IMG/VR virus record: IMGVR_UViG_3300033984_000473
Coordinates: 62,001 to 126,000 of that record
Length of the DNA: 64,000 nucleotides
Reading direction: 5' to 3' (one strand)
A model generated the notes under the pieces. The model saw only the letters and a program-made list of their open reading frames with translations, was not told the DNA's origin and searched no databases. Positions 4,158 to 27,245 of this stretch are shown one piece after another (the stretch's first letter is position 1; each line of letters begins with the position of its first letter). The translations under genes were made by a program, and so were the position numbers.

Positions 4158-4228
4158 TATCTTTGTAGTGTACAAAATGAGATACGGGTCACGGCAAGTG
4201 AGAGAGTAGACTCCGTCACGCCTATATG
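4158..4228 (+). ncRNA. AGTAGACTCC-family element, copy 1
   Basis: TATCTTTG promoter; ACGGG-TCAC(GGCAA)GTGA-GAGAGTAGACTCC-GTCACGCCTATATG. Confidence 0.6.
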
Positions 4229-4322
4229 TTACCCAGTAAAAAATTAACATAATATTAACATTTAAAATTTGGTAGTATGGTTTAAATGTCTTATATTTGC
4301 CCTATCAATTAAAACACACATT

Positions 4323-4598
4323 ATGACACAATTTGAACAAGCACAAGAGCAAGTAAAGAATGGAGAATTGAGAACGCCTAATGTTTCGGCTGGGGCAAAG
4401 ACTGTTGACTATTTTGGTTATCAGTTATCTGTTCACAAATTCAATTTATCGTTGATGGCAAAGGGAATGTCTTTCAAGGGTATTACGTTTACACAGATTA
4501 AAAAGTATTACGGATTGAAAGGTAGAAGTGCGAAAGATTGCCTACCGCAATTCCTTGAGATTGTCGAGAAATACAAACAAGAACTAAACCCTCAATAG
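4323..4598 (+). CDS. hypothetical protein
   Basis: Promoter 4268-4299, AAAACACACA leader, ATG at 4323, terminator AAACCCTC..GAGGGTTT-T run. Confidence 0.8.
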   Translation: MTQFEQAQEQVKNGELRTPNVSAGAKTVDYFGYQLSVHKFNLSLMAKGMSFKGITFTQIKKYYGLKGRSAKDCLPQFLEIVEKYKQELNPQ

Positions 4599-4619
4599 AG
4601 GGTTTTTTTTATGGGTCTA

Positions 4620-4635
4620 TGTACACAAATGTGTA
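4620..4635. repeat. TGTACACAAWTGTGTA palindrome, copy 1 of 6
   Basis: Other copies at 14575, 14734, 27858, 28264, 55749. Confidence 0.7.
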
Positions 4636-4693
4636 GGACGGAGTCTACTCTTTCACTTGACGTGACCCGTTGCTCTTTCAACACTACAAATAT
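4621..4693 (-). ncRNA. AGTAGACTCC-family element, copy 2
   Basis: Core at 4640-4650 on the minus strand behind a TATATTTG promoter. Confidence 0.6.
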
Positions 4694-4740
4694 AGAAAAT
4701 AAAATCCACACTACCTAATATAATGTGGATTTTTTTCAAT

Positions 4741-4920
4741 TTATTTTAGGCTTGTATCGAATAAGCATTTAAACCGATACCACATAGTTGTAAACCTAAC
4801 TATGTTAAGGTTTTTGGTTGCAAAGGTTTTGATGTTTCTTTGGTATCTTAAAATGTCATAATAGCAAGGTATGATTGTAACGCTACCAATAGTAAGTCCG
4901 AATAGTTTCCAATTGTTCAT
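4741..4920 (-). CDS. small hypothetical protein (59 aa, absent from ORF track)
   Basis: MNNWKLFGLTIG...; translated by hand. Confidence 0.5.
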   Translation of the reverse strand: MNNWKLFGLTIGSVTIIPCYYDILRYQRNIKTFATKNLNIVRFTTMWYRFKCLFDTSLK

Positions 4921-4925
4921 ATTTT

Positions 4926-5072
4926 CTATCTTTTTTTACGTTCTAATTTACGTCTTTCACGTCTCAATTCTTTACCACTTTTTGGTATTTCTAATTTGTC
5001 TGGGTGTTGAGCGGGATTAGTAATGTTATATGTTGGATAATTTTCAAATGGGCTTTTACCTTCATTTCTCAT
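4926..5072 (-). CDS. small basic protein (48 aa, absent from ORF track)
   Basis: MRNEGKSPF...ELRRERRKLERKKR; own promoter. Confidence 0.6.
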   Translation of the reverse strand: MRNEGKSPFENYPTYNITNPAQHPDKLEIPKSGKELRRERRKLERKKR

Positions 5073-5145
5073 AGTGTATGTCTTTTAATTAAAAAACAAA
5101 GATAAGGATAAGTTTTCACTTATCCAAATCTTTTTGTATTTATTT

Positions 5146-5595
5146 TTAAACTTTTTTGAATATCAAAAGTCTTGCACTATCAAATACGTTTGAACATTTA
5201 CCGCATGAACTTGCTTTTTTTGGCGTTTTGAATTTTCTATGAACGTGTGAACATTTAGGACAAACCGCTTCAAGTGTACCCTTAACAATGATTGTGTTAT
5301 TTTCGGTATAACAACGATTTCCATCACAACCGATTGACAATGCTTTACGTTTCCACGTGCTATCGTGTCCGTGTCCGTGTCCAACCAATGCGTGAGCAAT
5401 TTCGTGTAGTATTGTATTTTTTACTCTTGCTTCGTCATTCAATAGTATCAAATGTTTTGATAAGCTGATACGTCTGTAAGTGTAGTTGCAACAGCCAAAT
5501 CTACGCTTTGCGTTATCTAAATTAAACATCCAATTATCAAGTCCGTGTTCTTTCATTAATTTTTCCCCTAATTCACTTGCTTTAACTAATTCCAT
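5146..5595 (-). CDS. SprT-like zinc metalloprotease
   Basis: HEIAHAL (HExxH), GHGHDSTWK, C-terminal CxxC pairs. Confidence 0.9.
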   Translation of the reverse strand: MELVKASELGEKLMKEHGLDNWMFNLDNAKRRFGCCNYTYRRISLSKHLILLNDEARVKNTILHEIAHALVGHGHGHDSTWKRKALSIGCDGNRCYTENNTIIVKGTLEAVCPKCSHVHRKFKTPKKASSCGKCSNVFDSARLLIFKKV

Positions 5596-5689
5596 AATTT
5601 GTGTTTTTAATTGGTTACTTATTCAACACTACAAATATAATGATAATAATCCACACTACCAAATATAATGTGGATTATTTTCAATTATT

Positions 5690-5953
5690 TTATAAATTAT
5701 CTGCAAGTTCACAAAGTTGATGTGGTGTGAGTACGCTATAACAATAGGAATAGCCTTGATTATCGAGTATTGAATCGTTTACCAATTCATCGAGCCATCT
5801 ACTACCAACGAGGTTAAACGCTAATTCATCGGGAACTTTAATACAAGGTTGCCCCGTGTGTTTGCTTTTCTTTTTTGATTTCCTTGCTTTAAGGATAAGA
5901 CGCATTTCAATCTTATTGATAAACGTTTCGAGTTGTTGAGTTTTCGTTGTCAT
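5690..5953 (-). CDS. hypothetical protein
   Basis: ORF track; start at MTTK. Confidence 0.65.
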   Translation of the reverse strand: MTTKTQQLETFINKIEMRLILKARKSKKKSKHTGQPCIKVPDELAFNLVGSRWLDELVNDSILDNQGYSYCYSVLTPHQLCELADNL

Positions 5954-5955
5954 AA

Positions 5956-6078
5956 TTATACGCATCTATGGTTGCTCCAGTATCTACGTTGTTGTCCACA
6001 TCGTGAGGCACAACTTTGGCATAATAACCAAACAGAAAATAATACGATTGCTATTGCATAAGGTCTAAATGATTTCAT
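5956..6078 (-). CDS. small putative lipoprotein (40 aa, absent from ORF track)
   Basis: MKSFRPYAIAIVLFSVWLLCQSC...; own promoter. Confidence 0.55.
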   Translation of the reverse strand: MKSFRPYAIAIVLFSVWLLCQSCASRCGQQRRYWSNHRCV

Positions 6079-6117
6079 AATAAGTGTTTTAATTGATTAG
6101 AGTACAAATATAGTGAA

Positions 6118-6315
6118 TTAGTTTGACACTACCAAATTTTCATCTACTTTTTTTGCGTCAAGTATTAAAATAATTCCACACAAAGTGCCGAACCCTAAAA
6201 ACGTAAATAAACTACACATTAATTGGTCATTGGTTTCTGATACGAATATACCGATAAAGCCTAATATTTGACAAAAAAGTGTGATAAGAACAAAGATAAG
6301 ATTTAATTTTTTCAT
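6118..6315 (-). CDS. small membrane protein
   Basis: Two hydrophobic segments; own promoter. Confidence 0.7.
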   Translation of the reverse strand: MKKLNLIFVLITLFCQILGFIGIFVSETNDQLMCSLFTFLGFGTLCGIILILDAKKVDENLVVSN

Positions 6316-6404
6316 TGTGTTTGTTTTAATTGATTAGAGTACAAATATAGGTATTAGTTTTGACATATCCTAATTTATTTGCAATTATTTTTCGTGTGTG
6401 TTGG

Positions 6405-6485
6405 CTGCTGACGTATGTGCGTGTTGGAGTCTACTCTTTTGATATTCCCATATCAACCCGTTACTCTTTCAACACTACAAATATA
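6405..6485 (-). ncRNA. AGTAGACTCC-family element, copy 3
   Basis: Core 6426-6436; hairpin replaced by TTGATAT(GGGA)ATATCAA. Confidence 0.6.
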
Positions 6486-6526
6486 AGAAAAAGAAATGAC
6501 ACTACCAAACGATAGTGCCATTATTT

Positions 6527-6712
6527 TTAAATTAATTTCATTTCAAATCCGTAATGACAAAAGCCAGTGATATTTGAAATTTCGTCTGAAACAAAATCAT
6601 CAATGTCTTGTTCTTCTACGATGTCGCTTGGCACTTCGATTTCAAATTCAACAGGTAAGTCTACTACTTCTCCGTCTGTATCGAATTTAACATTTGTAAC
6701 GATTGCTTTCAT
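6527..6712 (-). CDS. hypothetical acidic protein
   Basis: Own promoter. Confidence 0.75.
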   Translation of the reverse strand: MKAIVTNVKFDTDGEVVDLPVEFEIEVPSDIVEEQDIDDFVSDEISNITGFCHYGFEMKLI

Positions 6713-6797
6713 AATGCTAGTATTAATTGATTAGAGTACAAATATAAGATAAAAAATCCACACTACCTAATATAATGTGGATTAATTTTAATTTATT

Positions 6798-7061
6798 TTA
6801 GTCAACTATTCCTATCAATAATTTGTCTGTGTAACGTCTACCTTTATTCAAGTCGTGTGCTATTCCGACAAGTACGCCATACAACGTATCTTTTATAGGC
6901 AAATCGGGATAGTCCATTTGTAACATTTCGATTGTGGTTTCTGCAACGTACTTGCACGTATCTTTATTTCCATAACCCCAATTCTCGCAATACCCAACCC
7001 TACGAATAAGGTCTGCATAAGATATAGGATAATAACCATTTTGAATTTTTGACTTTGCCAT
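6798..7061 (-). CDS. hypothetical protein
   Basis: Own promoter. Confidence 0.75.
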   Translation of the reverse strand: MAKSKIQNGYYPISYADLIRRVGYCENWGYGNKDTCKYVAETTIEMLQMDYPDLPIKDTLYGVLVGIAHDLNKGRRYTDKLLIGIVD

Positions 7062-7140
7062 AGTGTGTTTTGATTAGAGTACAAATATAGGTAAAAAAAA
7101 ATAACCTACCAAATATTTGATAGGTTATTTTTAATTTATT

Positions 7141-7428
7141 TTATTCTTCCCAAAACATTATCGTTCCAGCATCGTTCCATTCTGCCCACCAGCCGTGTTT
7201 TCTCAATAGCTTCATAAACTCGTTGTGAACTCCGAACTCGTATTTTGTGTAGTTTTCGGTGTAGTAACTGAATAGGTGCAACCCATCTTTTGCTTCGTCT
7301 CCGTTCTCTCCAGAACTCCAAATTCCGCCTTTAGAACCATTGAACTCCTCGGTTGTTCTCATAAACAAATTTGGATACTTTGCTTCGATTGCTTTCATCA
7401 TTGCTTTTCTTGTACTTGCCATAATCAT
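7141..7428 (-). CDS. hypothetical protein
   Basis: Own promoter. Confidence 0.8.
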   Translation of the reverse strand: MIMASTRKAMMKAIEAKYPNLFMRTTEEFNGSKGGIWSSGENGDEAKDGLHLFSYYTENYTKYEFGVHNEFMKLLRKHGWWAEWNDAGTIMFWEE

Positions 7429-7519
7429 AGTGTATTGGTGGTTGCTTCATTGCAACAGTACAAATATAGGTATAATAATCCACACTACCAAATGTAATGT
7501 GAATTATTTTCAATTATTT

Positions 7520-7702
7520 TTAAACTTTTTTTCGTAGTTTCAAATCTTTGATTACCTTTGCAACCATATCTTGCACTTCAAACTCGCTTTGATTATCAGT
7601 ATCGGTGCAATCGGGAACGTACCCCAATTCGATTAGTTTGTTGGTAATTGTGATACCAATTTCTTGTCGTTCATCTCGGTCTAACTTTCTTGTCTTAGCC
7701 AT
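7520..7702 (-). CDS. hypothetical protein
   Basis: Own promoter. Confidence 0.75.
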   Translation of the reverse strand: MAKTRKLDRDERQEIGITITNKLIELGYVPDCTDTDNQSEFEVQDMVAKVIKDLKLRKKV

Positions 7703-7777
7703 TGTGTATGTTTTAATTGATTAGAGTACAAAGATAAGGATAAGTTTTCACTTATCCAAATCTTTTACCAATTATTT

Positions 7778-7978
7778 TTAGTCTTTCTCAAAAGATTTTA
7801 CCCAAAAGATAGGTAGGTCTCCGTATTCTTGTTTGAATTGTACAACCCCTTTTTCTTGTGCGTCTTTGTCGCTGGTCGCTTGGATTGTAAGTCCATACTT
7901 TTGGTGGTCATCGCCTTGTTCTCTGCCATAGTGGTCGTTAGGGTCGATAGACATAATTGTAACGTGATAACTTTTCAT
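7778..7978 (-). CDS. hypothetical protein
   Basis: Start corrected to MKSY, downstream of the promoter. Confidence 0.75.
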   Translation of the reverse strand: MKSYHVTIMSIDPNDHYGREQGDDHQKYGLTIQATSDKDAQEKGVVQFKQEYGDLPIFWVKSFEKD

Positions 7979-8070
7979 AAGATAGTGTGTTAATTGATTA
8001 GAGTACAAATATAGAACATTCTTTTTTAATATCCTAATGAATTTCATTTTTTTTTAAACTTTTTTTACCT

Positions 8071-8135
8071 TATCTTTGTAGTGTTGAAAGGGTCACGACA
8101 AGTGAAAGAGTAGACTCCGACACGTCTATATGCGA
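8071..8135 (+). ncRNA. AGTAGACTCC-family element, copy 4
   Basis: TATCTTTG 8071-8078; core 8108-8118. Confidence 0.6.
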
Positions 8136-8221
8136 ACTGCTCCCGACAAGGCACAAAAAAAGAGGGACACAACTCCCTCTTTCCCCACGTTAATTGCTTA
8201 ACGTTTCACCAATTAAATATA

Positions 8222-8416
8222 TTATTCCATTCCGTATTTATTACATTTTTTCTTTGTCTTAAACTCAAATGTGGGTGCTAACATTCCACCCCAAAAGATA
8301 AAACAAACTACAAACCCTTTAAAAAACATTTCCCAAGTTGATGGCATACCACCAAATGCACTTGTTAATGATGCGAAAAATATAACTACTAATAATACTG
8401 ATAAATTCTTTGACAT
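8222..8416 (-). CDS. small membrane protein
   Basis: Two hydrophobic segments; start corrected. Confidence 0.7.
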   Translation of the reverse strand: MSKNLSVLLVVIFFASLTSAFGGMPSTWEMFFKGFVVCFIFWGGMLAPTFEFKTKKKCNKYGME

Positions 8417-8472
8417 AATGTTTGTGTTTTGATTAGAGTACAAATATAAGATTTTAATTTGACATATCCTAA

Positions 8473-8631
8473 TTAATATCTAAAAACTTTCGGTCTTGTT
8501 CTATTTTTTAAACCCACTTCTGAACACTTCATACATTGTTGTTTTCCATCATTGTGTTTTACAATAACAATATCAAAACCTTGATGTAATACTTCAACTT
8601 GTGTTTGAGTTCCAACGATTATAACTTTCAT
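8473..8631 (-). CDS. small hypothetical protein (52 aa, absent from ORF track)
   Basis: MKVIIVGTQTQVEV...; preceded by a structured leader. Confidence 0.55.
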   Translation of the reverse strand: MKVIIVGTQTQVEVLHQGFDIVIVKHNDGKQQCMKCSEVGLKNRTRPKVFRY

Positions 8632-8651
8632 AGTGTGTTTTTTGATTAAGT

Positions 8652-8715
8652 AATAACCGAGTGGGGATTGCTAGTCGGTTGTTAGTCCGTGCGTTCCAAC
8701 TCTACCTCGATTATT
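8652..8715 (-). promoter_or_regulatory. structured 5' leader
   Basis: AATAATCGAG/CTCGGTTATT 10-bp closing stem right after the promoter. Confidence 0.45.
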
Positions 8716-8764
8716 ACACTACAAATATAAGACTTTAATTTGATATAACCTAATTTATTTTGAA

Positions 8765-9064
8765 TTATTTTCCAATTCTTTTTCTGTGCATTGAACTTGG
8801 GTGCGTGTTGTCTGCTTTGCTTTCAAAACAATATGTAGGCATACCGCTCATTGAGTGTAAATCTGTCAATATGATTATGTACCCCTCGGTCAAACATCGT
8901 TTAAGATTTTCATTCATTTTAAACATTTTGATTTGTGGGAACTTTTTAGCAAATGCTTGTAAGTCGTCATCATTTTCAACTATGTATCTTTCAATTTCAA
9001 CTTCTCCCGATTGTGGACTTGTATAAACGCCCCATTTTAAATCTTTGTGTTTTACTACTAACAT
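8765..9064 (-). CDS. hypothetical protein
   Basis: Own promoter. Confidence 0.7.
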   Translation of the reverse strand: MLVVKHKDLKWGVYTSPQSGEVEIERYIVENDDDLQAFAKKFPQIKMFKMNENLKRCLTEGYIIILTDLHSMSGMPTYCFESKADNTHPSSMHRKRIGK

Positions 9065-9142
9065 AATCTATGTGTTTTGATTAGAGTACAAATATAGGTA
9101 AAAAAAATAAGACTACCAAATAAATGATAGTCTTATTTTAAA

Positions 9143-9385
9143 TTATTCTAAACTTGTTCCCTCAAAATCATACTCATATTGAATATGTGGATATTGTTTA
9201 TCCAAATATTTGTGTAGTCTATCTACACTTCTAAATCTTTTAACAATTTCTTTATCTTGCCACGAATCTAAAAATACATATTCTTTGATTATAGCAACAT
9301 AACCACCTTTGAATATTTTACCTTTATCGGGTATTGCCAAAACATTATCGGTCAAAACATTTTCTCTTAATATAAACTCTCTCAT
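9143..9385 (-). CDS. hypothetical protein
   Basis: Own promoter. Confidence 0.75.
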   Translation of the reverse strand: MREFILRENVLTDNVLAIPDKGKIFKGGYVAIIKEYVFLDSWQDKEIVKRFRSVDRLHKYLDKQYPHIQYEYDFEGTSLE

Positions 9386-9471
9386 TGTCTATTGTTTTAA
9401 TTGATTAGAGTACAAATATAGGTAAAAAAAATAAGACTACCAAATAAATGATAGTCTTATTTTAATTATTT

Positions 9472-10904: not shown

Positions 10905-10975
10905 TATCTTTGTAGTGTTGAAAGAGCAACGGGTCATGACAAATGAAAGAGTAGACTCCGACACGCCTATATGCC
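10905..10975 (+). ncRNA. AGTAGACTCC-family element, copy 5
   Basis: Core 10949-10959; hairpin TCAT(GACAA)ATGA. Confidence 0.6.
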
Positions 10976-11000
10976 ACGTGAACCCCAAACAAAAAAAACC

Positions 11001-11198
11001 CTAGTAAGGGTTTCTTGGTGTGTGTGTTTTGCCTGTGGTTATATCCACCCACTTTTGTTTTGATTCTTTTTTGGCTAGAGCTTCAACGCTTTTGATTTTG
11101 TCTTCTCCAGCTTGGGTTGCTTCAGCGTGTGTGTGACCGCATTTGATAGCGAAGTTGTAAGCTGATTTTCTTAAGATTTCTTGGACTCTTGCATTCAT
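11001..11198 (-). CDS. hypothetical protein
   Basis: Own promoter. Confidence 0.75.
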   Translation of the reverse strand: MNARVQEILRKSAYNFAIKCGHTHAEATQAGEDKIKSVEALAKKESKQKWVDITTGKTHTPRNPY

Positions 11199-11826: not shown

Positions 11827-11904
11827 AACTTAAAAAGATTTAATTATTAATGATTAGAGAACAAAGGTAGTTTTTTTAATTGATACTACCAAACAATTTA
11901 ACAT

Positions 11905-12234
11905 TTATTTTATTGCTAATAATTCAGCCAATTTGTCTGTGGCTTTTGAACTATGACCGCCAATGTGCCAATTTGTGATTTTGGTTTTTGCTAAACCCCT
12001 TGCACCATTGTAATTTTTACCATTTTTCCAATTGTATATGGTTGCAATTGTGCCATCTTCAAATTCGATTTCCCATTCAGCATCTACCTTGTAGCCATCG
12101 CCATCAGTAGGTTGTCCAAACATTGCTTTTAATTTTGCATAGGTTGTTTGGATTTCGCCTTGCAAGTGAGTACCACAAGCATCAATACTTTTTGTGTTGT
12201 GAGTGTGAAACGGAATTGTGATTTCTTTTGACAT
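11905..12234 (-). CDS. hypothetical phage protein
   Basis: Own promoter. Confidence 0.8.
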   Translation of the reverse strand: MSKEITIPFHTHNTKSIDACGTHLQGEIQTTYAKLKAMFGQPTDGDGYKVDAEWEIEFEDGTIATIYNWKNGKNYNGARGLAKTKITNWHIGGHSSKATDKLAELLAIK

Positions 12235-12467: not shown

Positions 12468-12531
12468 AATATGTGTGTTAATTGATTAGAGTACAAATAT
12501 AGTGATTAGTTTTGATATAACCTAATTTATT

Positions 12532-12900
12532 TTAATTTATTTTTGAATAATACCAATTAATTATTTTGTAGATAGTTTCAGCATTAACCAATAAATTAAT
12601 CATTGGCTTATCGTGTCCGTACTTGGCACTTTCCCATTCTTTGGTTTTGTGTTGATTATAGATTTCAGCCAACAAAGTTTCTTTCGGATTGTCATTCATT
12701 AACAATTCAACGTTAAACATATCAGTTTTGTCGCTTGGTGTAATGTATAGACATTTTGCCCAATCAAATAGGTTTCTGTTTGTCTTAATGATTACTACCA
12801 TTTCTTTGATAATATCAGCATCATCAAGTGTAGGTGTAAGTTTTTTAGTTACCTTTGCAACTTTTTTATTCCAACCTAAAATATTTGATAATTGTTCCAT
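12532..12900 (-). CDS. hypothetical protein
   Basis: Own promoter. Confidence 0.75.
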   Translation of the reverse strand: MEQLSNILGWNKKVAKVTKKLTPTLDDADIIKEMVVIIKTNRNLFDWAKCLYITPSDKTDMFNVELLMNDNPKETLLAEIYNQHKTKEWESAKYGHDKPMINLLVNAETIYKIINWYYSKIN

Positions 12901-12954: not shown

Positions 12955-13158
12955 TTAATAACTAACTAATTTGCAATATTCTCTTAATTCAGCCAAAGGG
13001 ATTCGAGTACCCCTAAATGAATAGTAGCCTTGACGCTCAAAACGTTTTGCCCATTCAATAAACCCTTGTTCAGCTTTTTCAGCACTTGCAAAATCTTTGT
13101 CCATATACATTCCAATTCCATCGGGACTTAAAATATCGTAACGTTTTTTCTTTGACAT
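12955..13158 (-). CDS. hypothetical protein
   Basis: Own promoter. Confidence 0.75.
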   Translation of the reverse strand: MSKKKRYDILSPDGIGMYMDKDFASAEKAEQGFIEWAKRFERQGYYSFRGTRIPLAELREYCKLVSY

Positions 13159-13465: not shown

Positions 13466-13540
13466 TATCTTTGTAGTGTTGAAAGAGCAACGGGTCACGG
13501 CAAGTGAGAGAGTAGACTCCGTCACACCCTATACTCACTT
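13466..13540 (+). ncRNA. AGTAGACTCC-family element, copy 6
   Basis: Core 13510-13520. Confidence 0.6.
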
Positions 13541-13594
13541 CAAGCCAAAAACAAAAAAAACCCTAATAGGGTTTTTAGTTCCAGATAGTTTTAC

Positions 13595-15003: not shown

Positions 15004-15076
15004 ATGTCCACTTTATCAGATAGAGGCAAACTGGCTTTGTGCAATTAAGGGGGCACGATATGCTTACAACCACTTG

Positions 15077-15149
15077 TGGAACCGACAGGACTCGAACCTG
15101 TGACGTACTACGATGAAGCAGCTGCTCTAACCAACTGAGCTACAGAACC
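15077..15149 (-). tRNA. atypical tRNA-Met(CAT)-like / pseudo-tRNA
   Basis: Canonical D and T arms; 6-nt loop TTCATC; two T-T mismatches in acceptor. Confidence 0.6.
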
Positions 15150-16914: not shown

Positions 16915-17007
16915 TTTTTGTGTTTTAATTGTTATTAATTTTCTTTAGCAAAGATAAGAATAATAATCTACACTACCAAATATAATGTAGATTATTTTCA
17001 TTTTATT

Positions 17008-17304
17008 TTACCAATCGTTTTGGTTGAAAGTGGTTTTGGTTTTAATCCAATCCATAACTTGCCCCGCATAATAGCTAGTAGTTAAGTCAAATAGAAACCA
17101 ATCCAATTGTCTTTCAGCTTCACTGCTACTGGTAGATACTTCAAGTCTATTCCACTCTTTAGCGTTTGACTGGTTACTACCTTTGCTACTACCTTGTGAG
17201 AAATCCCACTCTTTAGCAATAATGGTTACTTTGGTTTTACTTGCTTCAACGGTAATAACTCCACCTTTGCAATACTCTCCGATTTTAAATGTTTTACTTG
17301 CCAT
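17008..17304 (-). CDS. hypothetical phage protein
   Basis: Start corrected to MASK. Confidence 0.8.
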   Translation of the reverse strand: MASKTFKIGEYCKGGVITVEASKTKVTIIAKEWDFSQGSSKGSNQSNAKEWNRLEVSTSSSEAERQLDWFLFDLTTSYYAGQVMDWIKTKTTFNQNDW

Positions 17305-21544: not shown

Positions 21545-21560
21545 AGTGTTTTTAAATATT

Positions 21561-21851: not shown

Positions 21852-21919
21852 GATATACTGTGTTTTAATTAGAGTACAAAGATAAGGATATGTTTTCACA
21901 TATCCAAATCTTTTTTGAT

Positions 21920-22294
21920 TTATTTTACAAATAGTTTATTCCCTATACTGTATATAAACCCAAACTTGTAACCGTCAGCGTTCACGCCATTGAATACCCA
22001 GTTCGGACATACTCTTGGATTATACGTTACAGCCTCGCCACCTAATCCGTATATCATATCTCGACAACGAATTTCCTCACATAGTATCCACGCACACACA
22101 ACTTTCTCGCCACCCTCAAAAATCTTTTGAGCTGTCTTCTTGCCACTACGCAACTCACAATCAATGAAGTGCATTTGACAAACATCTGGGTGTACATACT
22201 GTACAACGCCATTCGGGTACTGTATTTTCCAGTGCATGAAATGTTTTCCAGCCCCTAAATGAAATCTTACCTTAAACCGTCTAACTCTTGCCAT
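21920..22294 (-). CDS. hypothetical phage protein
   Basis: Own promoter. Confidence 0.75.
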   Translation of the reverse strand: MARVRRFKVRFHLGAGKHFMHWKIQYPNGVVQYVHPDVCQMHFIDCELRSGKKTAQKIFEGGEKVVCAWILCEEIRCRDMIYGLGGEAVTYNPRVCPNWVFNGVNADGYKFGFIYSIGNKLFVK

Positions 22295-22368
22295 AATTAC
22301 TGTGTTTTAATTAGAGTACAAATATAGAAATAAAAAATGACATTACCAAATGATAATGCCATTATTTT

Positions 22369-22602
22369 TTATAATCTTACTAATTCGTATTCATCACTCA
22401 CATTGTCGCCATATCCATTACCACTTAACCAGTCGAAAATTTCCTCTTGGCTATCAGTAAAATTCTCCAACGTCAAAGTAGTAATTCGTTTGGGTTCATT
22501 GTCGGTTATTTGATATACTGTAACATCTTTGTAACCTGTACACTCTTGGACATCATCAATATCCTGTACTTCTTTCTCGATAACATAATACAATTTTTTC
22601 AT
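22369..22602 (-). CDS. hypothetical protein
   Basis: ORF track. Confidence 0.75.
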   Translation of the reverse strand: MKKLYYVIEKEVQDIDDVQECTGYKDVTVYQITDNEPKRITTLTLENFTDSQEEIFDWLSGNGYGDNVSDEYELVRL

Positions 22603-22604
22603 AA

Positions 22605-22931
22605 CTATTCTAAATTGGTTTCCATTAATTCACAAATCGTAATACGGTCTTGAATACTTCCCAAATCAGATAACTTCAATAGGTGTCTTACAAAGCTACC
22701 GTCAGCCTCAACTACCAGTATTCCGTCCTGTGTTACTTTTAGTGGGTGTACATCAAATACGCCCCCTGTAATATCGTTTCTTACCTCTAGGTAATCATCG
22801 GGTGTATCGTTTTCCAAATCCACTTCATCAAAGATAGTGATTTCGGATTGCTTGGTTAATAATTCAGAAAAGTAGTTCGCAACTTCACTTTCTAAATTGT
22901 CTAAATCATTGTTGAAATTTTTGCTTGACAT
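22605..22931 (-). CDS. hypothetical acidic protein
   Basis: Own promoter. Confidence 0.75.
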   Translation of the reverse strand: MSSKNFNNDLDNLESEVANYFSELLTKQSEITIFDEVDLENDTPDDYLEVRNDITGGVFDVHPLKVTQDGILVVEADGSFVRHLLKLSDLGSIQDRITICELMETNLE

Positions 22932-22992
22932 AATATATGTTTTTAATTAGAGTACAAATATAAGAATAAAAATCCACACTACCAAATATTTT

Positions 22993-23220
22993 TTAAAGTA
23001 TTTCTAAAAATACTCGTTCAATTTGAGTAACTCGGTTTTCATTGTTCCAGTCAACAAATTCGTCAACATCGCAATTGTCTAAATCATGTTCTTCTAATAC
23101 ATGAAATTCATTCCAACTTTCTTTCACTTCCTCATCAAAGTTAGCAACCTCGCCAACATTGGTTACTTTAACAATACCTAAGTCTTCCCCACTATCGCTG
23201 TCTGTTAATTGATAATACAT
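22993..23220 (-). CDS. hypothetical acidic protein
   Basis: Own promoter. Confidence 0.75.
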   Translation of the reverse strand: MYYQLTDSDSGEDLGIVKVTNVGEVANFDEEVKESWNEFHVLEEHDLDNCDVDEFVDWNNENRVTQIERVFLEIL

Positions 23221-23305
23221 AATATATGTTTTAATTGATTAGAGTACAAATATAAGAATAAAAATCCACACTACCAAAAATAATGTGGATTATTTTCAAT
23301 TATTT

Positions 23306-23644
23306 TTAATAAGCCCCAATACTCCCATAAGATATTGGGTAACCTTTGTTGCCCCACATAACATTTCCGTCAACGTACTCCTGTTTTATATCAGTCAATA
23401 CCGTATCTAAATAATATTCGTAAGCAATTCTTAAACTATCAGCTTTGGTAGTCTGTGGTGGATAAAATGCAAATAGGTTTTCTCTAGGGTGTCCTACAAA
23501 TAGAATGTAGATTTTATTACGCCCACGTCCGTATTCGTGTGCGTTTACTCGGTTCTTAAAGCCTGTGAATGACAAAGGCTTTCCGTTCATAATAAGCCCC
23601 AACCACGTTAATCTTTCGTTAACTTCTTCTAATGGTAAATTCAT
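23306..23644 (-). CDS. hypothetical protein
   Basis: ORF track. Confidence 0.75.
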   Translation of the reverse strand: MNLPLEEVNERLTWLGLIMNGKPLSFTGFKNRVNAHEYGRGRNKIYILFVGHPRENLFAFYPPQTTKADSLRIAYEYYLDTVLTDIKQEYVDGNVMWGNKGYPISYGSIGAY

Positions 23645-23646
23645 AA

Positions 23647-23907
23647 TTATTGGATTTCAAGGTTATTCCAAATCATATCCCCATTGTCGTCAAGGATTTC
23701 CATTGTGGTTTGATAATCGTTTTCTTCGATTGTGATAAACTCTACGGTGTCTTCCAAAAGAGTAGCCCCAATACCTAAATAATCTGCAACGCTGTCGCTG
23801 TCAGTAAGTTCGCCACTTTGTAACTTTGCTTTTACGTCTTCCATTTGTTCCACGCTATCAAATTCGATACGTTCCCAAACTGTAACTTTTACATCTAAAC
23901 TTGCCAT
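23647..23907 (-). CDS. hypothetical acidic protein
   Basis: Own promoter. Confidence 0.75.
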   Translation of the reverse strand: MASLDVKVTVWERIEFDSVEQMEDVKAKLQSGELTDSDSVADYLGIGATLLEDTVEFITIEENDYQTTMEILDDNGDMIWNNLEIQ

Positions 23908-23976
23908 AATTTCTTTGTGTTTTAATTAGAGTACAAATATAGGTAATTAAAATGTAACTACCAAATTTTTATTGGA

Positions 23977-24303
23977 TTATTTCCACAAACAACATTCCTG
24001 TAAAAAATCGTATTGTTTATCAGTCAATTCTCCAACCGTGTCAAACTCAAACTTTTCGTTGAAATAGTTTTCGTCCTCAAGTTCAACCTTGGTAGTTACC
24101 GTAATATCCAATATAGCACCTATAAGACTTTCATAGCCCATACCACTATCAATACTGCCGTCCTTTAAAGCAACATTTGCTTTTTCTAACAATTCCTCTT
24201 TGGTATCAGCCGTGAACTCAATCGTTGGATACGAACCTGTACCACCGCCCCAATAATTCCCCAATACAAAACCTGTGGCTTTGAATGATTTTTTCTTTTC
24301 CAT
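23977..24303 (-). CDS. hypothetical protein
   Basis: Own promoter. Confidence 0.75.
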   Translation of the reverse strand: MEKKKSFKATGFVLGNYWGGGTGSYPTIEFTADTKEELLEKANVALKDGSIDSGMGYESLIGAILDITVTTKVELEDENYFNEKFEFDTVGELTDKQYDFLQECCLWK

Positions 24304-24425
24304 AATGATATACTTTTTATTTCTTGTACAAATATAAGACTATTATTCTAATCCACCTAACAAAATGTGAATTATTTTTTATTTATTTTTCTGCTGTTTT
24401 ATTTGGTAGTGTCAAAACTATTCCC

Positions 24426-24500
24426 TATCTTTGTAGTGTTGAAAACAACGGGCGAACCCTAGCAAGGTGGAAGAGTAGACTCCGTCCTACCTTATACTCA
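24426..24500 (+). ncRNA. AGTAGACTCC-family element, copy 7
   Basis: Core 24473-24483. Confidence 0.6.
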
Positions 24501-24557
24501 AATAAAAAAATTTCAAAAAAAAATGCCCTACCATTTCTGATAGGGCTAATTTTTATT

Positions 24558-24917
24558 TTAGCATTCGGCTTCAAACTCGCATTGTCCGTTTTCTTTTAGA
24601 TAATCTCGAATTTGTCGCCCAAGCCCCAAGTCAGCATAATCGCTTAATTCAGCTTTTGAAATTCCAGCTTCCTCTAATTGCTTGTCATTGTAGCCGTTTT
24701 TCTCTTTAAAGAAATTGTCAATAATTCCTAACTTGTCGCCTAGGCTTTCCTCAATGTTTTTGATTTCTTCCTCAACTCCTTCCAAATCTTCCTCTTGAAA
24801 ATTGTAGTTAAGAGTTTCGGGTTGAAACCCTGTTACTCCAAACCTGTCAGCCGCACTGCTACTTTGAACAGCAAACCAAAATTTTCCCTCGATGTCGCCA
24901 CTGTAATACCTACCCAT
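24558..24917 (-). CDS. hypothetical phage protein
   Basis: MGRYYSGDIEGKFWFAVQSS; own promoter. Confidence 0.8.
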   Translation of the reverse strand: MGRYYSGDIEGKFWFAVQSSSAADRFGVTGFQPETLNYNFQEEDLEGVEEEIKNIEESLGDKLGIIDNFFKEKNGYNDKQLEEAGISKAELSDYADLGLGRQIRDYLKENGQCEFEAEC

Positions 24918-25014
24918 AATTTCTAATTTTTAATGTGATTATTAATTTCTTTAGCAAAGATAGAAAAAATAATCCATACTACCAAATGTAATATGGATTA
25001 TTTTCAAATTATTT

Positions 25015-25896
25015 TTAAACCATTTCCAATACGCCACTTTTTCTAGCAACGAACTCCAAAGATTTTTGGTTCATTTTGTAACCACTACCCAACATAATCG
25101 TTTCCAGTTTACCGTTTTCACGTTTCGGTGCAGATAATTCGTGTGTAGTGAATTTCGTAATACCACTATGCAAACCCCAAAGGTTAAGCCCTTTGTCATT
25201 AAATTCGCCCTCAATACAGTTGTACAACGTTTCCATTTTGTTAATGCTACGTGTACTCTTTTCCGACAATTCCTTTATACTTGTCAATTCCTTGTCAAAC
25301 CCTAACAAATACTTAACCATTTCGTCAGCCAATTCTCTAGTACAATCCCTGTCAGCCAGTACGTTATATAGCTCAATTTGTTTAAGGCTACGGTTCAATG
25401 CAGTTTCAATCAAAAATGGAATTTCTTTGATACGGTGTTCAATACTAGCCGAGTGTCTAAATTTCGCTTCGCCTTGCTTATAGAACTTGAAAAACTGATT
25501 AGAACAGCTCATAGTAAAATCCCCAATACCAATAGACAATGAAGTACTACCGTCATTACTATCCAGTACTGTAATGAATTTTTTAATCCTGTCATGCCCT
25601 ACAACGCCATCGCCAGTAATACCTAACTGTAAAAATACCTTGCGACCCTCATTCATAGAACCAGCTTTGGTTACAATCAAATCGTTACCAAACGGTCTAA
25701 TGCCTTGAAGCACCATATCAACGATTTCGTGGTTCTGTGATACTGTATAACCGTCCTTAACAGTATTGATACACTTGCCTAACTTGTCATTGAATAAACC
25801 AAAGTAACCACTAGGATTAAGGTTAGAATCAAATAACGGTCTTTTGCTAATGTTGAAGTCTAAACCGTTCGCTACTAAAATGTCTTGTGTGTTCAT
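25015..25896 (-). CDS. DUF932 (DUF945/TIGR03299-like) protein
   Basis: YTVSQN, AGSMNEGRKVFLQL, DSNDGSTS, CSNQF, HSASI, NLWGL pattern typical of the family. Confidence 0.85.
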   Translation of the reverse strand: MNTQDILVANGLDFNISKRPLFDSNLNPSGYFGLFNDKLGKCINTVKDGYTVSQNHEIVDMVLQGIRPFGNDLIVTKAGSMNEGRKVFLQLGITGDGVVGHDRIKKFITVLDSNDGSTSLSIGIGDFTMSCSNQFFKFYKQGEAKFRHSASIEHRIKEIPFLIETALNRSLKQIELYNVLADRDCTRELADEMVKYLLGFDKELTSIKELSEKSTRSINKMETLYNCIEGEFNDKGLNLWGLHSGITKFTTHELSAPKRENGKLETIMLGSGYKMNQKSLEFVARKSGVLEMV

Positions 25897-26034
25897 ATCT
25901 AAAATTGTTTAATTGATTAGAGTGCAAATATACAACCTTTATTTCATTCCACCAAATAAAAATGCAATTATTTTTAATTTATTTTTTTATGTAAAATAAT
26001 CTATAAAAAATTAGGATATGTAAAAAACATTCCC

Positions 26035-26110
26035 TACCTTTGTACTGTAATTAAATTACGGGTCGCATAGGATGTGAAAGAGTAGACTCCACCGTACCTT
26101 ATACTCAAAT
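26035..26110 (+). ncRNA. AGTAGACTCC-family element, copy 8
   Basis: Core 26080-26090; hairpin TCGCAT(AGG)ATGTGA. Confidence 0.6.
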
Positions 26111-26204
26111 AGCCAAATAGCCAAATACAAAAAACAAAAATGCAAAATAAACCTATAACTTAATATAAGCCTATTTCGCATTTTAAGGTACTTTTAAAGG
26201 ACGT

Positions 26205-27023
26205 TTATACCAATTCCAATTCCTTGGTAGGAACGCTATCATAAATAGCGTTAACCTTATCAAAAATAGCTTGGCTATCTTTGGCTGTTTCAATTACAAA
26301 ACCACTTGTAAAAGCAATTTTATTATCAGCACCTTTGCCTGTCATTTTTTTGTATTTTAAACCACAAATAACATTCTGTTTATCCAAAAATCGTAGGTCG
26401 TCATTATCAGCATTGATAACCTCAAAACCGTTATAAGTAGTAGGTAATTTGTCAAATACCATTGCTACATTAAAACCACGTTTCAATAATTCTAATGATT
26501 TAATATCATTCGTTTCAGAACGTGAAAAAGTCAAATGATAATTACTAGGTAACACTTTGTCAAAACGAAAATGATTTTTTGTATAATCATAAAATTGTAC
26601 ATTCGGGTACATTTCAAAAATGTTTTTAGTATTATTGTCAAATACTTTGTATTTTTCAAATGGCAAATCACTTGTACCATTTAAACGTATAGTAACAATA
26701 GCTTTGTCAGTATGTTTTTTTACCGCTTTGCCAATTTCCACATATAATTGGTTCATAAATTCAATACGACTACTTAAAAAGTATTCAGTTTTGGCAACCC
26801 TACCTTGCATAACATTACTATACATACCGCCAAAACCACTACCAACAAGGCAACTATCAGCACAACCTTTACTTGCATGGCTACATACATTGATACCTTT
26901 GCTATTGGCTGTAAAAGGCGACATATACATTATATAGGTCATATAACCTAATTTTTCTCCTTTTACTGTTTTCGCATTATTAGTACTTAATAATGGTTTT
27001 CTTTTTACTACTTCTACATTCAT
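26205..27023 (-). CDS. GP88-like phage protein
   Basis: NVCSHASKGCADSCL Cys cluster, IRLNGTSD, FYDYTK, YHLTFS, DLRFLD. Confidence 0.8.
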   Translation of the reverse strand: MNVEVVKRKPLLSTNNAKTVKGEKLGYMTYIMYMSPFTANSKGINVCSHASKGCADSCLVGSGFGGMYSNVMQGRVAKTEYFLSSRIEFMNQLYVEIGKAVKKHTDKAIVTIRLNGTSDLPFEKYKVFDNNTKNIFEMYPNVQFYDYTKNHFRFDKVLPSNYHLTFSRSETNDIKSLELLKRGFNVAMVFDKLPTTYNGFEVINADNDDLRFLDKQNVICGLKYKKMTGKGADNKIAFTSGFVIETAKDSQAIFDKVNAIYDSVPTKELELV

Positions 27024-27161
27024 AACTAATTTGTTTTAATTGATTAGAGTGCAAATATACAACTATTATTTTAATATACAAGTTTTTTTGTAATTATTTT
27101 TAATATTTTTTTTATGTGTAAAATAATTCACTTTTTATTTGGTAGTGTCATTTATTATCAC

Positions 27162-27245
27162 TACATTTGTACTGTTGAAATGAAACACCCAAAGCAAGAT
27201 ACCACAAATCTGAGAAGTAGACTCCGTCCTACCTTATATCCAAGT
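27162..27245 (+). ncRNA. AGTAGACTCC-family element, copy 9 (divergent)
   Basis: AAGTAGACTCCGTCCTACCTTAT at 27215-27237. Confidence 0.5.

What the first reader, a model, noticed from the sequence alone, without database searches (positions are those of the whole stretch)
4158..27245. Family of nine dispersed, promoter-driven ~70-nt non-coding elements with an invariant AGTAGACTCC core
Seen: cores at 4204(+), 4640(-), 6426(-), 8108(+), 10949(+), 13510(+), 24473(+), 26080(+), 27215(+). Each lies just downstream of its own TAnnTTTG promoter and is not followed by a real ORF. Architecture: (AC)GGG - variable hairpin - A(A/G)GAGTAGACTCC - variable tail usually ending CTATATG or CTTATA. The hairpin changes sequence but keeps pairing (TCAC/GTGA, TCAT/ATGA, TTGATAT/ATATCAA, TCGCAT/ATGTGA), which suggests selection on structure. 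GGG can pair with TCC, leaving the conserved purine-rich core bulged. Seven of nine point against the gene array. I do not recognise it as a known RNA family. Inference: an early multi-copy small RNA (decoy for a host defence protein, antitoxin mimic or guide scaffold with variable tail), or a DNA site (GAGT-AG-ACTC is itself an inverted repeat) for a dimeric protein.
Basis: partly seen in the sequence, partly recalled or inferred. Interest (0 to 1): 0.85.

Follow-up and report, generated by a model that had tools for sequence, protein, structure and literature searches.

The report
Multi-copy small RNA family of Bacteroidota phages
The nine repeats are real copies of a previously undescribed, strongly conserved small-RNA gene family found in many phages of Flavobacteria-type bacteria. 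Its job is unknown, but it most likely acts early in infection by binding a host factor.

Summary
All nine cores are present (plus-strand coordinates are off by one) where chance predicts about 1.4. A covariance model finds no further copy in the 64 kb. Each copy is a stand-alone unit: a Bacteroidota-type TAnnTTTG -7 box, a 5' hairpin (P0) that starts at the predicted +1, GGG, a covarying hairpin (P2), an invariant stretch RAG-AGUAGACUCC, a semi-conserved tail (NNC-CUAC/ACGY-C-YUAUA), then a U-run or terminator.

The family extends well beyond the window. I found 132 hits (about 106 distinct) on 62 contigs of 4-360 kb, and copies in the cultured Tenacibaculum phage Larrie. In the one-genome-per-species bacterial set, family members occur only on short MAG contigs. 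Rfam 15 has no match.

P2 (92.8% of cells paired, all four pairs with compensatory changes, many G.U pairs) and P0 are well supported. No other helix is.

Copies lie in either orientation to their neighbours and hug DUF932, GP88 and SprT-like early genes, yet Larrie has neither DUF932 nor GP88. In one lineage the element points into an iteron array.

Best reading: an early, trans-acting, multi-copy small RNA that presents an invariant single-stranded motif to a conserved host factor (decoy or sponge). The RNA gene family is well supported. The mechanism is inferred.

The parts
4158..4232 (+). Element 1. -7 box 4158-4165; predicted +1 at 4170; P0 GUAC..(GA)UAC; GGG; P2 UCAC-GGCAA-GUGA; core 4205-4214; tail GUCACGCCUAUAUG. 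A separate promoter (box ends 4299) and a 91-aa ORF (4323-4598, +) follow.
   Evidence: (62.3 bits)
4586..4694 (-). Element 2. -7 box 4694-4687; +1 at 4682; P0 GUUGAAAGAGCAAC; P2 UCAC-GUCAA-GUGA; core 4649-4640; bidirectional terminator 4605-4586. Convergent with element 1 and the ORF between them.
   Evidence: (57.8 bits)
6408..6485 (-). Element 3. -7 box 6485-6478; +1 at 6473; P0 GUUGAAAGAGUAAC; P2 UUGAUAU-GGGA-AUAUCAA; core 6435-6426; tail AACACGCACAUAC. No own terminator; the next minus-strand promoter (box ends 6342) follows.
   Evidence: (42.6 bits)
8071..8183 (+). Element 4. -7 box 8071-8078; +1 at 8083; short leader GUUGAAA (no P0); GGG; P2 UCAC-GACAA-GUGA; core 8109-8118; 35-nt 3' extension; terminator hairpin about 8161-8178.
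   Evidence: (56.3 bits)
10905..11020 (+). Element 5. -7 box 10905-10912; +1 at 10917; P0 GUUGAAAGAGCAAC; P2 UCAU-GACAA-AUGA; core 10950-10959; terminator 10993-11016.
   Evidence: (59.5 bits)
13466..13581 (+). Element 6. -7 box 13466-13473; +1 at 13478; P0 GUUGAAAGAGCAAC; P2 UCAC-GGCAA-GUGA; core 13511-13520; terminator 13556-13576.
   Evidence: (63.7 bits)
24426..24553 (+). Element 7. -7 box 24426-24433; +1 at 24438; P0 GUUGAAAACAAC; P2 CGAACC-CUAGCA-AGGUGG; core 24474-24483; tail GUCCUACCUUAUAC; terminator hairpin about 24525-24546.
   Evidence: (51.7 bits)
26035..26108 (+). Element 8. -7 box 26035-26042; +1 at 26047; P0 GUAAUUAAAUUAC; P2 UCGCAU-AGG-AUGUGA; core 26081-26090; tail ACCGUACCUUAUAC. 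Lies between the DUF932 and GP88 genes.
   Evidence: (54.5 bits)
27162..27266 (+). Element 9, a divergent 'class B' copy. -7 box 27162-27169; no GGG; hairpin AGAU-ACCACAA-AUCU; GAGA-AGUAGACUCC (core 27216-27225); tail GUCCUACCUUAUAU; then an AU-rich hairpin UUAUUUAGAACGAAUAUAAAUAA.
   Evidence: (19.6 bits, E 0.01)
25015..25896 (-). Associated neighbour, not part of the RNA: the DUF932 (PF06067) gene. Its relatives in other phages are flanked by elements on one or both sides.
26205..27023 (-). Associated neighbour, not part of the RNA: the GP88-family (PF17338) gene. Here it is flanked by elements 8 and 9. It is the most widely shared protein family near elements (18 contigs).

Best explanation
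Each element is an independent small-RNA gene of about 55-110 nt, transcribed by the host RNA polymerase from a consensus Bacteroidota promoter.

Shown:
- The predicted 5' end is locked into a hairpin (P0) that abuts a GGG.
- A second hairpin of arbitrary sequence (P2) follows.
- Exactly 3 nt later comes an almost invariant stretch, AGUAGACUCC, and then a semi-conserved pyrimidine-rich tail and a U-run or terminator.
- The family is phage-restricted, multi-copy, independent of the orientation of its neighbours, and spread across unrelated phages of Bacteroidota.

Inferred:
- The RNA acts in trans, early in infection.
- Two generic helices hold out the invariant 10-13-nt motif so that a conserved host macromolecule binds it. 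The partner is most likely an RNA-binding, RNA-processing or nucleic-acid-sensing defence protein common to Bacteroidota.
- Several gene copies supply the dose needed to titrate that partner (decoy or sponge).
For: 1. The copies are real and non-random.
2. Transcription signals are present. A -7 box occurs in 85 of 108 distinct copies, and a -33 element in 66 of those. In 54 of 75 leaders the terminal helix starts exactly at the 5th nt after the box, against at most 10 of 75 at any other offset. A direct U-run follows in 31 of 108; most window copies and many others have canonical terminators instead.
3. It is an RNA of the given strand. In P2, 92.8% of cells pair and all 4 pairs show double changes. 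The first pair is U:A in 59 and C:G in 45, with 0 mismatches. There are 41 G.U cells. Slid controls pair at 28-55%.
4. The core sits at a fixed 3-nt distance from P2. UAGACUCC is invariant apart from one UAAACUCC among the pattern- and model-collected copies; in copies found independently of the RNA pattern it varies at one position (GUAUACUCC in L139 and L144).
5. The units are stand-alone. They lie in either orientation to flanking genes, and the copy upstream of DUF932 is flipped between lineages.
6. The same RNA sits behind at least three promoter types.
7. It is phage-only. In the one-genome-per-species bacterial set, family members occur only on short MAG contigs.
8. No obligatory phage protein partner exists. 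The complete genome of phage Larrie has 3-4 copies but no GP88 or DUF932. This points to a host partner.
9. Copy number is 1-10 per contig, clustered among small early genes next to DUF932 and SprT-like genes. I read these as entry or anti-defence genes from my own knowledge of plasmid leading regions; that reading was not tested here.
Against: - There are no expression data. The +1 and the 3' ends are predictions.
- No partner has been identified.
- Single-sequence folding is not unusually stable (z from -4.7 to +0.6). Only P0 and P2 are supported by covariation.
- The invariance of the core is partly an ascertainment effect of the search pattern.
- The tight linkage to DUF932 and the iteron arrays of one lineage hint at cis or DNA-level roles that a pure trans decoy does not explain.
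Confidence: 0.38

Rival explanations
1. Seed-pairing regulator. The invariant single-stranded AGAGUAGACUCC base-pairs with a highly conserved host RNA (rRNA, tRNA, tmRNA or a conserved mRNA) or with a phage mRNA, altering its stability or translation.
For: The conserved stretch is unpaired and flanked by structured scaffolds, as in many sRNA seeds. The family is multi-copy and probably early.
Against: No site within 2 mismatches of the complement exists anywhere else in the 64-kb window on either strand. Bacteroidota lack Hfq and ProQ (my knowledge). Host RNAs were not available to scan, and the only genome scan demanded the full element, so a host target is untested.
Confidence: 0.14
2. RNA anti-CRISPR or another defence-RNA mimic, a specific form of the decoy. 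The element imitates the handle of a Bacteroidota crRNA or another defence ncRNA and loads into the effector unproductively.
For: The units are solitary and promoter-driven in phages, multi-copy and host-phylum specific, like the published phage 'solitary repeat units'. From memory only, the 3' halves of Cas13b repeats (..GAAGGGUAnnnACAAC) loosely resemble GAAGAGUAGACUCCAAC.
Against: The full-element pattern found no array-like multi-hit locus in any bacterial genome of 185,579 species. The family lacks the closing GUUG...CAAC geometry of a 36-nt Cas13b repeat in most members (P0 is usually GUAC, GUAG or GUC). The resemblance is recalled, not tested.
Confidence: 0.1
3. Origin-associated RNA. 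The promoter and RNA activate or prime replication (transcriptional activation, R-loop or primer), and the conserved motif is recognised by replication or RNA-processing factors.
For: In at least 15 Cbastvirus-like contigs the single element points straight into 5-7 direct iterons (CCCCnTCATATTAAACA) followed by an A-run. In L021 two tandem elements precede a different iteron set. In phage Larrie the copies sit in or next to the genome's only long non-coding, repeat-rich stretch.
Against: The window has nine copies spread over 23 kb, each with an ordinary terminator and no iterons. 31 of 108 copies terminate at once in a U-run. Covarying RNA hairpins are not needed for an R-loop. The iterons could equally be packaging or operator sites; TerL lies 0.2-2.4 kb away.
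Confidence: 0.12
4. RNA partner or regulator of the neighbouring DUF932, GP88 or SprT-like early proteins (a ribonucleoprotein, a substrate, or a cis-antisense control of the cassette).
For: DUF932 genes have an element within 300 nt in 11 of 11 contigs, against 13.5% for all ORFs. In loci fetched by DUF932 alone, 11 of 14 carry elements, nine of them on both sides of the gene (L135-L138, L140-L143, L145; the second copy in L142 was seen by eye). GP88 lies near elements in 18 contigs.
Against: The complete Larrie genome has the elements but no GP88 or DUF932. Most window copies are not next to these genes. The orientation of the upstream copy flips between lineages. The linkage may only reflect a shared early-gene module moving between phages.
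Confidence: 0.1
5. DNA-level element: a conserved promoter-plus-stem-loop cassette that serves as a recombination linker for shuffling early genes (like the PeSL cassettes of T4-type phages), or a protein-binding DNA site.
For: Elements flank individual genes in direct or inverted orientation (4205+/4640- around one ORF; DUF932 cassettes). Insertion and duplication variants exist in L047, L088 and L091.
Against: The shared identical stretch is only 10-13 nt, while P0 and P2 differ between copies, so it is a poor substrate for homologous recombination. G.U pairs, strand-specific promoters and the exact +1 register argue for a selected RNA. Core variants break the GAGT/ACTC palindrome.
Confidence: 0.08
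6. Cis-acting leader, such as a put-like antitermination RNA or a riboswitch, that modifies the polymerase or controls read-through into downstream genes.
For: The position is promoter-proximal. A U-run or terminator lies directly downstream, and in L086 a gene follows each element.
Against: The downstream genes have their own promoters. Many elements converge on the 3' ends of genes or face away from them, and orientation flips between orthologous loci. There is no alternative terminator/antiterminator pairing.
Confidence: 0.05

Closest known systems
RNA anti-CRISPRs (Racr; phage 'solitary repeat units')
   Same: Phage-encoded, promoter-driven and non-coding. Short structured RNAs that can occur in several copies and are thought or shown to act as decoys for a host effector.
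   Different: Racrs are recognisable copies of host CRISPR repeats. Here no host counterpart was found in the one-genome-per-species bacterial set, and the architecture (P0-GGG-P2-core-tail) is not that of a known repeat.
Protein-sponge sRNAs (CsrB/RsmZ type, 6S RNA)
   Same: Conserved single-stranded motifs are displayed on variable helices. High dosage is needed. They act in trans on a protein.
   Different: Those RNAs carry many repeats of a short motif within one molecule, or mimic an open promoter. Here there is one long invariant motif per molecule and many genes. Bacteroidota lack CsrA (my knowledge).
PeSL cassettes of T4-type phages (early promoter plus stem-loop repeats flanking small ORFs)
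   Same: Repeated promoter and stem-loop units in the hyperplastic early region of a large phage, flanking single small genes. The window also holds about 50 such ordinary gene promoters with a shared leader.
   Different: PeSLs are regulatory and recombination cassettes in front of genes within one phage group. The present element is a separate transcription unit with an invariant RNA core, conserved across unrelated phages and promoter types.
HK022 put RNAs / lambda nut sites
   Same: About 70 nt, two stem-loops, immediately downstream of early promoters, in more than one copy per phage.
   Different: put and nut act in cis on transcripts that continue into genes. Here the units end in terminators, often face away from genes, and flip orientation.
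Origin RNAs (ColE1 RNA II, T4 oriF/oriG transcripts)
   Same: A promoter-driven RNA next to iterons or an AT-rich region in one lineage.
   Different: Nine dispersed, terminated copies without iterons in the window. The conserved hairpin-plus-motif design is not known for origin primers.

Membership tests
Any Rfam 15 family | Covariance-model score at or above the gathering threshold, or at least a consistent sub-threshold hit on the copies | tested here: not met
   The gathering scan of the window found only tRNAs. The E<=5 scan of 4-28 kb gave no hit overlapping any copy. The E<=1 scan of five other loci holding 14 copies gave 0 hits.
tRNA / tRNA-like | Cloverleaf recognised by ARAGORN or RF00005 | tested here: not met
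   ARAGORN and Rfam tRNA hits lie elsewhere (15.1 kb, 58.5-59.2 kb); none falls at an element.
RNA anti-CRISPR (repeat mimic) | Sequence and structure identity to a CRISPR repeat present as an array in host genomes | tested here: not met
   The full-element pattern gave 19 loci in 185,579 species genomes. The real ones are on short MAG contigs with phage-type context. None is an array and none is from an isolate chromosome. Partial mimicry of a repeat was not tested.
RNA anti-CRISPR (repeat mimic) | Inhibits the cognate Cas effector | not testable with these tools
   Needs interference assays.
MITE / transposon end | Terminal inverted repeats bounding a mobile unit, with target-site duplications | tested here: not met
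   Copies occur singly (the L044 group), in direct or in inverted orientation. The conserved part is internal to a promoter-to-terminator unit. No flanking duplications were seen.
PeSL-type mobile regulatory cassette | An early promoter and stem-loop directly serving the downstream ORF | tested here: not met
   Downstream ORFs have their own promoter, and many elements converge on or diverge from genes.
put-like / nut-like antitermination signal | Lies in the 5' part of a transcript that continues into genes through terminators | tested here: not met
   The units are followed by a U-run or terminator, and orientation is independent of the genes. Read-through itself is not testable here.
Riboswitch / cis-regulatory leader | A conserved aptamer with an expression platform (alternative pairing) upstream of a regulated gene class | tested here: not met
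   There is no conserved downstream gene in cis. There is no alternative pairing of the tail with the leader or P2 (matched -4.03 against swapped -3.74 kcal/mol, 20 of 300 permutations).
Structured trans-acting sRNA gene (generic kind) | Own promoter, defined 5' end, terminator, no ORF, covarying helices | tested here: met
   Actual transcription was not tested.

The most novel reading that the evidence does not exclude
The family is a phylum-wide RNA counter-measure. It would be a small decoy RNA, carried by very different Bacteroidota phages (77-kb siphoviruses to contigs of more than 300 kb), that neutralises or hijacks one conserved host factor, for example an RNA-guided or RNA-sensing defence effector or an RNase, within the first minutes of infection. 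This would be an RNA-only takeover or anti-defence device with no protein partner of its own.
Probability: 0.25. Interest if true: 0.85.

Novelty: new member of a known kind. Interest (0 to 1): 0.68.

Why it matters
Phage non-coding RNAs are far less explored than phage proteins, and almost nothing is known for phages of Bacteroidota, which dominate marine, freshwater and gut habitats.

This RNA has an almost invariant 10-13-nt motif. It occurs in up to ten or more genes per genome and in unrelated phages behind different promoter types. That pattern implies strong selection and a conserved target.

A cultured phage-host pair (Tenacibaculum phage Larrie) carries the element, so the question can be tested directly. 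Identifying the partner could reveal a new host vulnerability or defence system and a new class of RNA-based takeover tool.

The work also supplies a usable covariance-model seed and a marker for early regions of Bacteroidota phages.

Tried and rejected
- **Rfam and tRNA searches.** Nothing at the elements.
- **Literature searches.** Searches for the core sequence, for phage sRNAs in Bacteroidota, and for DUF932/GP88 found only unrelated primers and papers. Two papers that were read do not mention the element.
- **A long-range helix between the 5' leader and the tail.** GUGUUG:CRACAC looks convincing in window copies 6426, 8109 and 10950. It does not generalise. An anchored search is no better than shuffled (3.95 against 3.80 bp), and matched against swapped duplex energies are not significant.
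- **Tail pairing with P2.** Not significant.
- **GGG pairing with tail positions 3-5.** Two of three pairs are at least 94% compatible. The middle pair is G.A in the ACGY class. Of the ACGUG variants, three compensate and two do not. I judged this inconclusive.
- **P3 (GUAG:CUAC or UAGAC:GUCUA).** Only one-sided variation is possible, and the pairing is broken in the GUAUAC variants. Unproven.
- **A mini-hairpin GAG-UAGA-CUC.** Contradicted by the GAC and GGC variants.
- **RNAalifold on the model alignment.** It predicted nothing because of gaps.
- **Single-sequence folds.** Inconsistent between copies.
- **A scan with the bare 14-mer of the class-B core.** It returned more than 110 mostly coding chance hits and only one new family member. 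This is useful as a negative control only.
- **blastn of a second element group against cultured phages.** No relevant hit.
- **GC skew of Larrie.** Monotonic and uninformative for the origin.
- **GP88 structure model (pLDDT 75).** No significant PDB neighbour.
- **Direct-repeat search near window copies.** No iterons.

Full report
**1. The observation**

The 10-mer AGTAGACTCC occurs exactly nine times in the window, at 4205+, 4640-, 6426-, 8109+, 10950+, 13511+, 24474+, 26081+ and 27216+. Dinucleotide-preserving shuffles give a mean of 1.39 and a maximum of 5.
- Eight copies share the 12-mer AGAGTAGACTCC. The ninth has GAAGTAGACTCC.
- No other site within two mismatches exists on either strand of the 64 kb.
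- A covariance model built from 20 family members (R1) and run without filters finds these nine and nothing else credible.
- All copies lie in the first 27 kb. That region is packed with small genes, nearly each with its own Bacteroidota-type promoter (TTTG ... TAnnTTTG) and a shared leader.

**2. Anatomy**

Every copy has a TAnnTTTG box, and seven of nine have a -33 TTTG/TTAG. Downstream come five parts:
- a 5' hairpin P0 (GUUG-loop-CAAC, GUAC..., GUAAU...);
- GGG;
- hairpin P2;
- the 3-nt spacer RAG and the core AGUAGACUCC;
- a tail NNC-(CUAC or ACGY)-C-YUAUA.

Five window copies then have a 20-35-nt extension and a canonical, often bidirectional, terminator (4605-4586, about 8161-8178, 10993-11016, 13556-13576, about 24525-24546). 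Copy 8109 lacks P0. Copy 27216 lacks GGG and is a divergent 'class B' form, also seen in L086, L003 and L169.

**3. The family outside the window**

A pattern scan of IMG/VR (CGGG-N8-30-AGAGTAGACTCC) returned 112 loci. Chance hits in G+C-rich coding DNA are easy to tell from true members, which share the promoter, P0, P2 and tail.
- Running R1 over the true loci gave 132 hits, about 106 distinct, on 62 contigs of 4 to about 360 kb, with 1-10 copies in the stretches fetched.
- The window is part of IMGVR_UViG_3300033984_000473, which is 232,931 bp.
- The same RNA sits behind at least three promoter types: TAnnTTTG..ATCGTTATAC.. (L004, L013, L020, L088); and ..GTATAGCA.. (L006, L028, L033). So the RNA, not the promoter, is the conserved unit.
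- One cultured phage carries it. Tenacibaculum phage Larrie (ON950054, Cbastvirus, 77.5 kb) has copies at 16935+, 18784+ and 19417+, plus a diverged minus-strand copy (seen by eye, about 17010-17035). All are in unannotated intergenic DNA opposite to the genes.
- A scan of one genome for each of 185,579 bacterial species found 19 loci. The genuine ones are on short MAG contigs (binned as Bacteroidales, Bacteroidota, Saprospirales, Mollicutes, Acidimicrobiaceae, and Patescibacteria/Saccharibacteria), with a phage-like layout. None is on an isolate chromosome.
- The host assignment to Bacteroidota rests on the promoter type, the Larrie host, those MAG bins that are Bacteroidota, and protein similarity to Tenacibaculum phages.
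- Rfam 15 has no match at any threshold tried, and literature searches found nothing.

**4. Structure**

P2 is firmly supported.
- On 106 distinct sequences, 92.8% of cells pair, against 72% after shuffling and 28-55% for slid partners.
- All four modelled pairs show changes on both sides.
- The pair adjoining GGG and the RAG spacer is U:A in 59 and C:G in 45, with no exception.
- Forty-one G.U cells show that the given strand is the folded one.

P0 is supported by register. Taking the 5th nucleotide after the -7 box as +1, 54 of 75 distinct leaders form a terminal helix of at least 3 bp whose first base is +1 and whose last base is the C before GGG. At every other offset at most 10 of 75 do so. 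The third pair covaries: GUA:UAC, GUU:AAC, GUC:GAC, GUG:CAC. The same kind of 5' hairpin also heads some mRNAs of the window, so it is a generic 5' cap-hairpin.

Nothing else is proven.
- GGG could pair with CUC/UCC of the core, but both sides are invariant.
- GGG could also pair with tail positions 3-5. That gives 97% and 94% compatible outer pairs and a middle pair of G:C or G.A. Three GUG variants compensate and two do not.
- Pairing of the tail with the leader or with P2 is not significant.
- Single-sequence folds disagree with one another.

The core is therefore best described as a 10-13-nt single-stranded segment held at a fixed distance from P2. Its invariance is partly due to the search pattern. 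In loci fetched through a neighbouring protein instead, the core is canonical in most, GUAAGUAGACUCC in L142 and GAGGUAUACUCC in L139 and L144.

**5. Context**

The units are independent of their neighbours. In the window, five copies converge on minus-strand genes and four are followed by same-strand genes that have their own promoters. In L086 every unit is co-oriented with the genes and sits between a terminator and the next gene promoter.

Clustering all ORFs in the fetched flanks gave these results:

| Protein family | Contigs with the family near elements | Element within 300 nt |
|---|---|---|
| GP88 (PF17338) | 18 | 1 of 19 genes (median distance 764 nt) |
| DUF932 (PF06067) | 11 | 11 of 11 contigs (median distance 118 nt) |
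| SprT-like protease | 9 | 5 of 9 contigs |
| All ORFs (baseline) | - | 13.5% |

- In 14 loci fetched by the DUF932 protein alone, 11 carry elements, nine of them on both sides of the gene. The upstream copy lies in either orientation.
- In the window the order is element 24474, a small gene, DUF932, element 26081, GP88, element 27216.
- The complete Larrie genome has elements but no GP88 or DUF932 (profile search E<0.01). Neither protein can therefore be an obligatory partner.
- In at least 15 Cbastvirus-like contigs the single element is followed by an AU-rich hairpin and 5-7 iterons. L021 has two tandem elements and a different iteron set. The window has no iterons near its copies.

**6. 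Interpretation**

What is shown:
- The copies form a family of stand-alone, strand-specific, non-coding units with strong promoter and terminator signals.
- Two helices covary or are defined by register.
- The motif is nearly invariant.
- The family is restricted to phages of one host phylum, is multi-copy, and clusters in early regions.

What I infer:
- These are trans-acting early small RNAs.
- Their conserved motif is read by a conserved host macromolecule, because the only complete genome examined lacks the candidate phage partners, and because sequence conservation spans phages that share almost no proteins. The window and Larrie share only a SprT-like protein and a weak phosphoesterase match.
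- A protein decoy or sponge is the simplest fit with one long invariant motif per RNA and many genes per genome.

I put about 0.8 on 'real small-RNA gene family' and about 0.35-0.4 on the decoy mechanism as stated. The rivals and what would refute each are listed separately: seed pairing, crRNA mimicry, origin RNA, partner of DUF932/GP88, DNA-level cassette, and cis leader.

**7. Comparison with known systems**

The element works most like phage decoy RNAs (RNA anti-CRISPRs) or protein-sponge sRNAs. It is not a member of any described family.
- It has no Rfam hit, no host repeat counterpart, no tRNA fold, no MITE logic and no cis expression platform.
- It resembles T4-type PeSL cassettes in genomic habit (promoter and stem-loop repeats among small early genes). 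It differs in being a separate, terminated transcription unit conserved across unrelated phages.

I file it as a new family within the known kind 'phage-encoded structured small RNA'.

**8. Limits**
- There are no transcript data.
- The +1 and the 3' ends are predicted.
- Contigs were sampled only around hits.
- Relatedness among contigs inflates counts and the neighbour statistics.
- The model alignment leans towards the P2 structure, although the decisive first pair is fixed by invariant flanks.
- Host RNAs and CRISPR repeats could not be scanned.

Noticed in passing
window 4.7-26 kb, minus strand (e.g. -7 boxes ending at 6105, 7082, 9089, 10053, 12923, 17330, 22319): About 50 small genes each have their own promoter (TTTGGTAG..N..TATATTTG) followed by a shared leader tACTCTAAT(C/T)AA(TT)AAAACAC. 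The -33 TTTG often sits in the loop of the upstream terminator hairpin. This layout resembles the PeSL cassettes of T4-type phages.
   Followed up: partly
window 5632-, 7461-, 11238-, 13959-, 15230- (promoter ends): Some mRNAs start with the same kind of 5' hairpin as the elements (GUUGAAUAAGUAAC and the like). It is then followed by the ordinary leader, so P0 is a generic 5'-end hairpin.
   Followed up: partly
window about 27241-27265; L027:3867-3900, L021:250-285, L019, L044:2876-2900, L062, L053: A recurrent AU-rich hairpin, UUAUUUAGAA(U/C)GAAUAUAAAUAA, lies downstream of elements in several unrelated contigs. It may be a second conserved RNA or terminator motif.
   Followed up: no
L044:2895-3000 and 14 related contigs; L021:400-620: Arrays of 5-7 direct iterons (CCCCnTCATATTAAACA; in L021 TACCCCCTATTGAATTG) lie directly downstream of the element. 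They are followed by an A-run, GGAGnnACAAAnTTAATnG and one or two further iterons. This looks like an origin or packaging site. TerL lies 0.2-2.4 kb away.
   Followed up: partly
window 26205-27023 (-) and 11 homologues (alignment A4): The GP88-family protein has three invariant cysteines (C47, C54, C58; Cx6Cx3C). Its predicted alternating beta/alpha fold has only weak, TIM-barrel-type PDB neighbours, TYW1 among them. It may be an Fe-S or radical-SAM-like enzyme. No PDB match was significant.
   Followed up: partly
L027:1060-1075, L010, L022, L045, L084, L112; window about 27330-27345: A conserved AAAAAATTTGCAAAGGTAC lies 30-40 nt downstream of many elements. It contains the palindrome TTTGCAAA. 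On the other strand it reads as a -7 box (TACCTTTG) pointing back across the element, so antisense transcription of the element is possible in this lineage.
   Followed up: no
window 4240-4262; Larrie (L132) 11860-11915, 12480-12540, 12840-12860, 13010-13045; L086, L005, L011: TTAACAT / TGTTAAA motifs are repeated just upstream of the -33 element of many promoters in several of these phages. They may be an UP-like element or a regulator site.
   Followed up: no
L047:3629-3690 (also L084, L094), L091:585-660, L088:182-260: Variant elements have an extra hairpin inserted right after the core and a second copy of (UAGA)CUCC before the normal tail. This suggests that CUCC plus the tail forms a unit of its own.
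   Followed up: no
window 15076-15149 (-); 58529-59188 (-): A tRNA-like gene that ARAGORN reports with an abnormal 2-nt anticodon, and a cluster of tRNA genes. Two of these are 99 nt long and are seen by Rfam only.
   Followed up: no
window 56387-57271 (-), 30720-31496 (-), 60952-61803 (-), 62057-63103 (-): The phage encodes its own sigma-70-family factor, an ADP-ribosylglycohydrolase, an SPFH/Band 7 protein and an AAA ATPase. The nearest phage relatives by protein are Tenacibaculum jumbo phages.
   Followed up: partly
L133 (Larrie record) 16935-17035: Two elements converge only about 45 nt apart with no terminator between them, so their transcripts would be complementary over the core.
   Followed up: no
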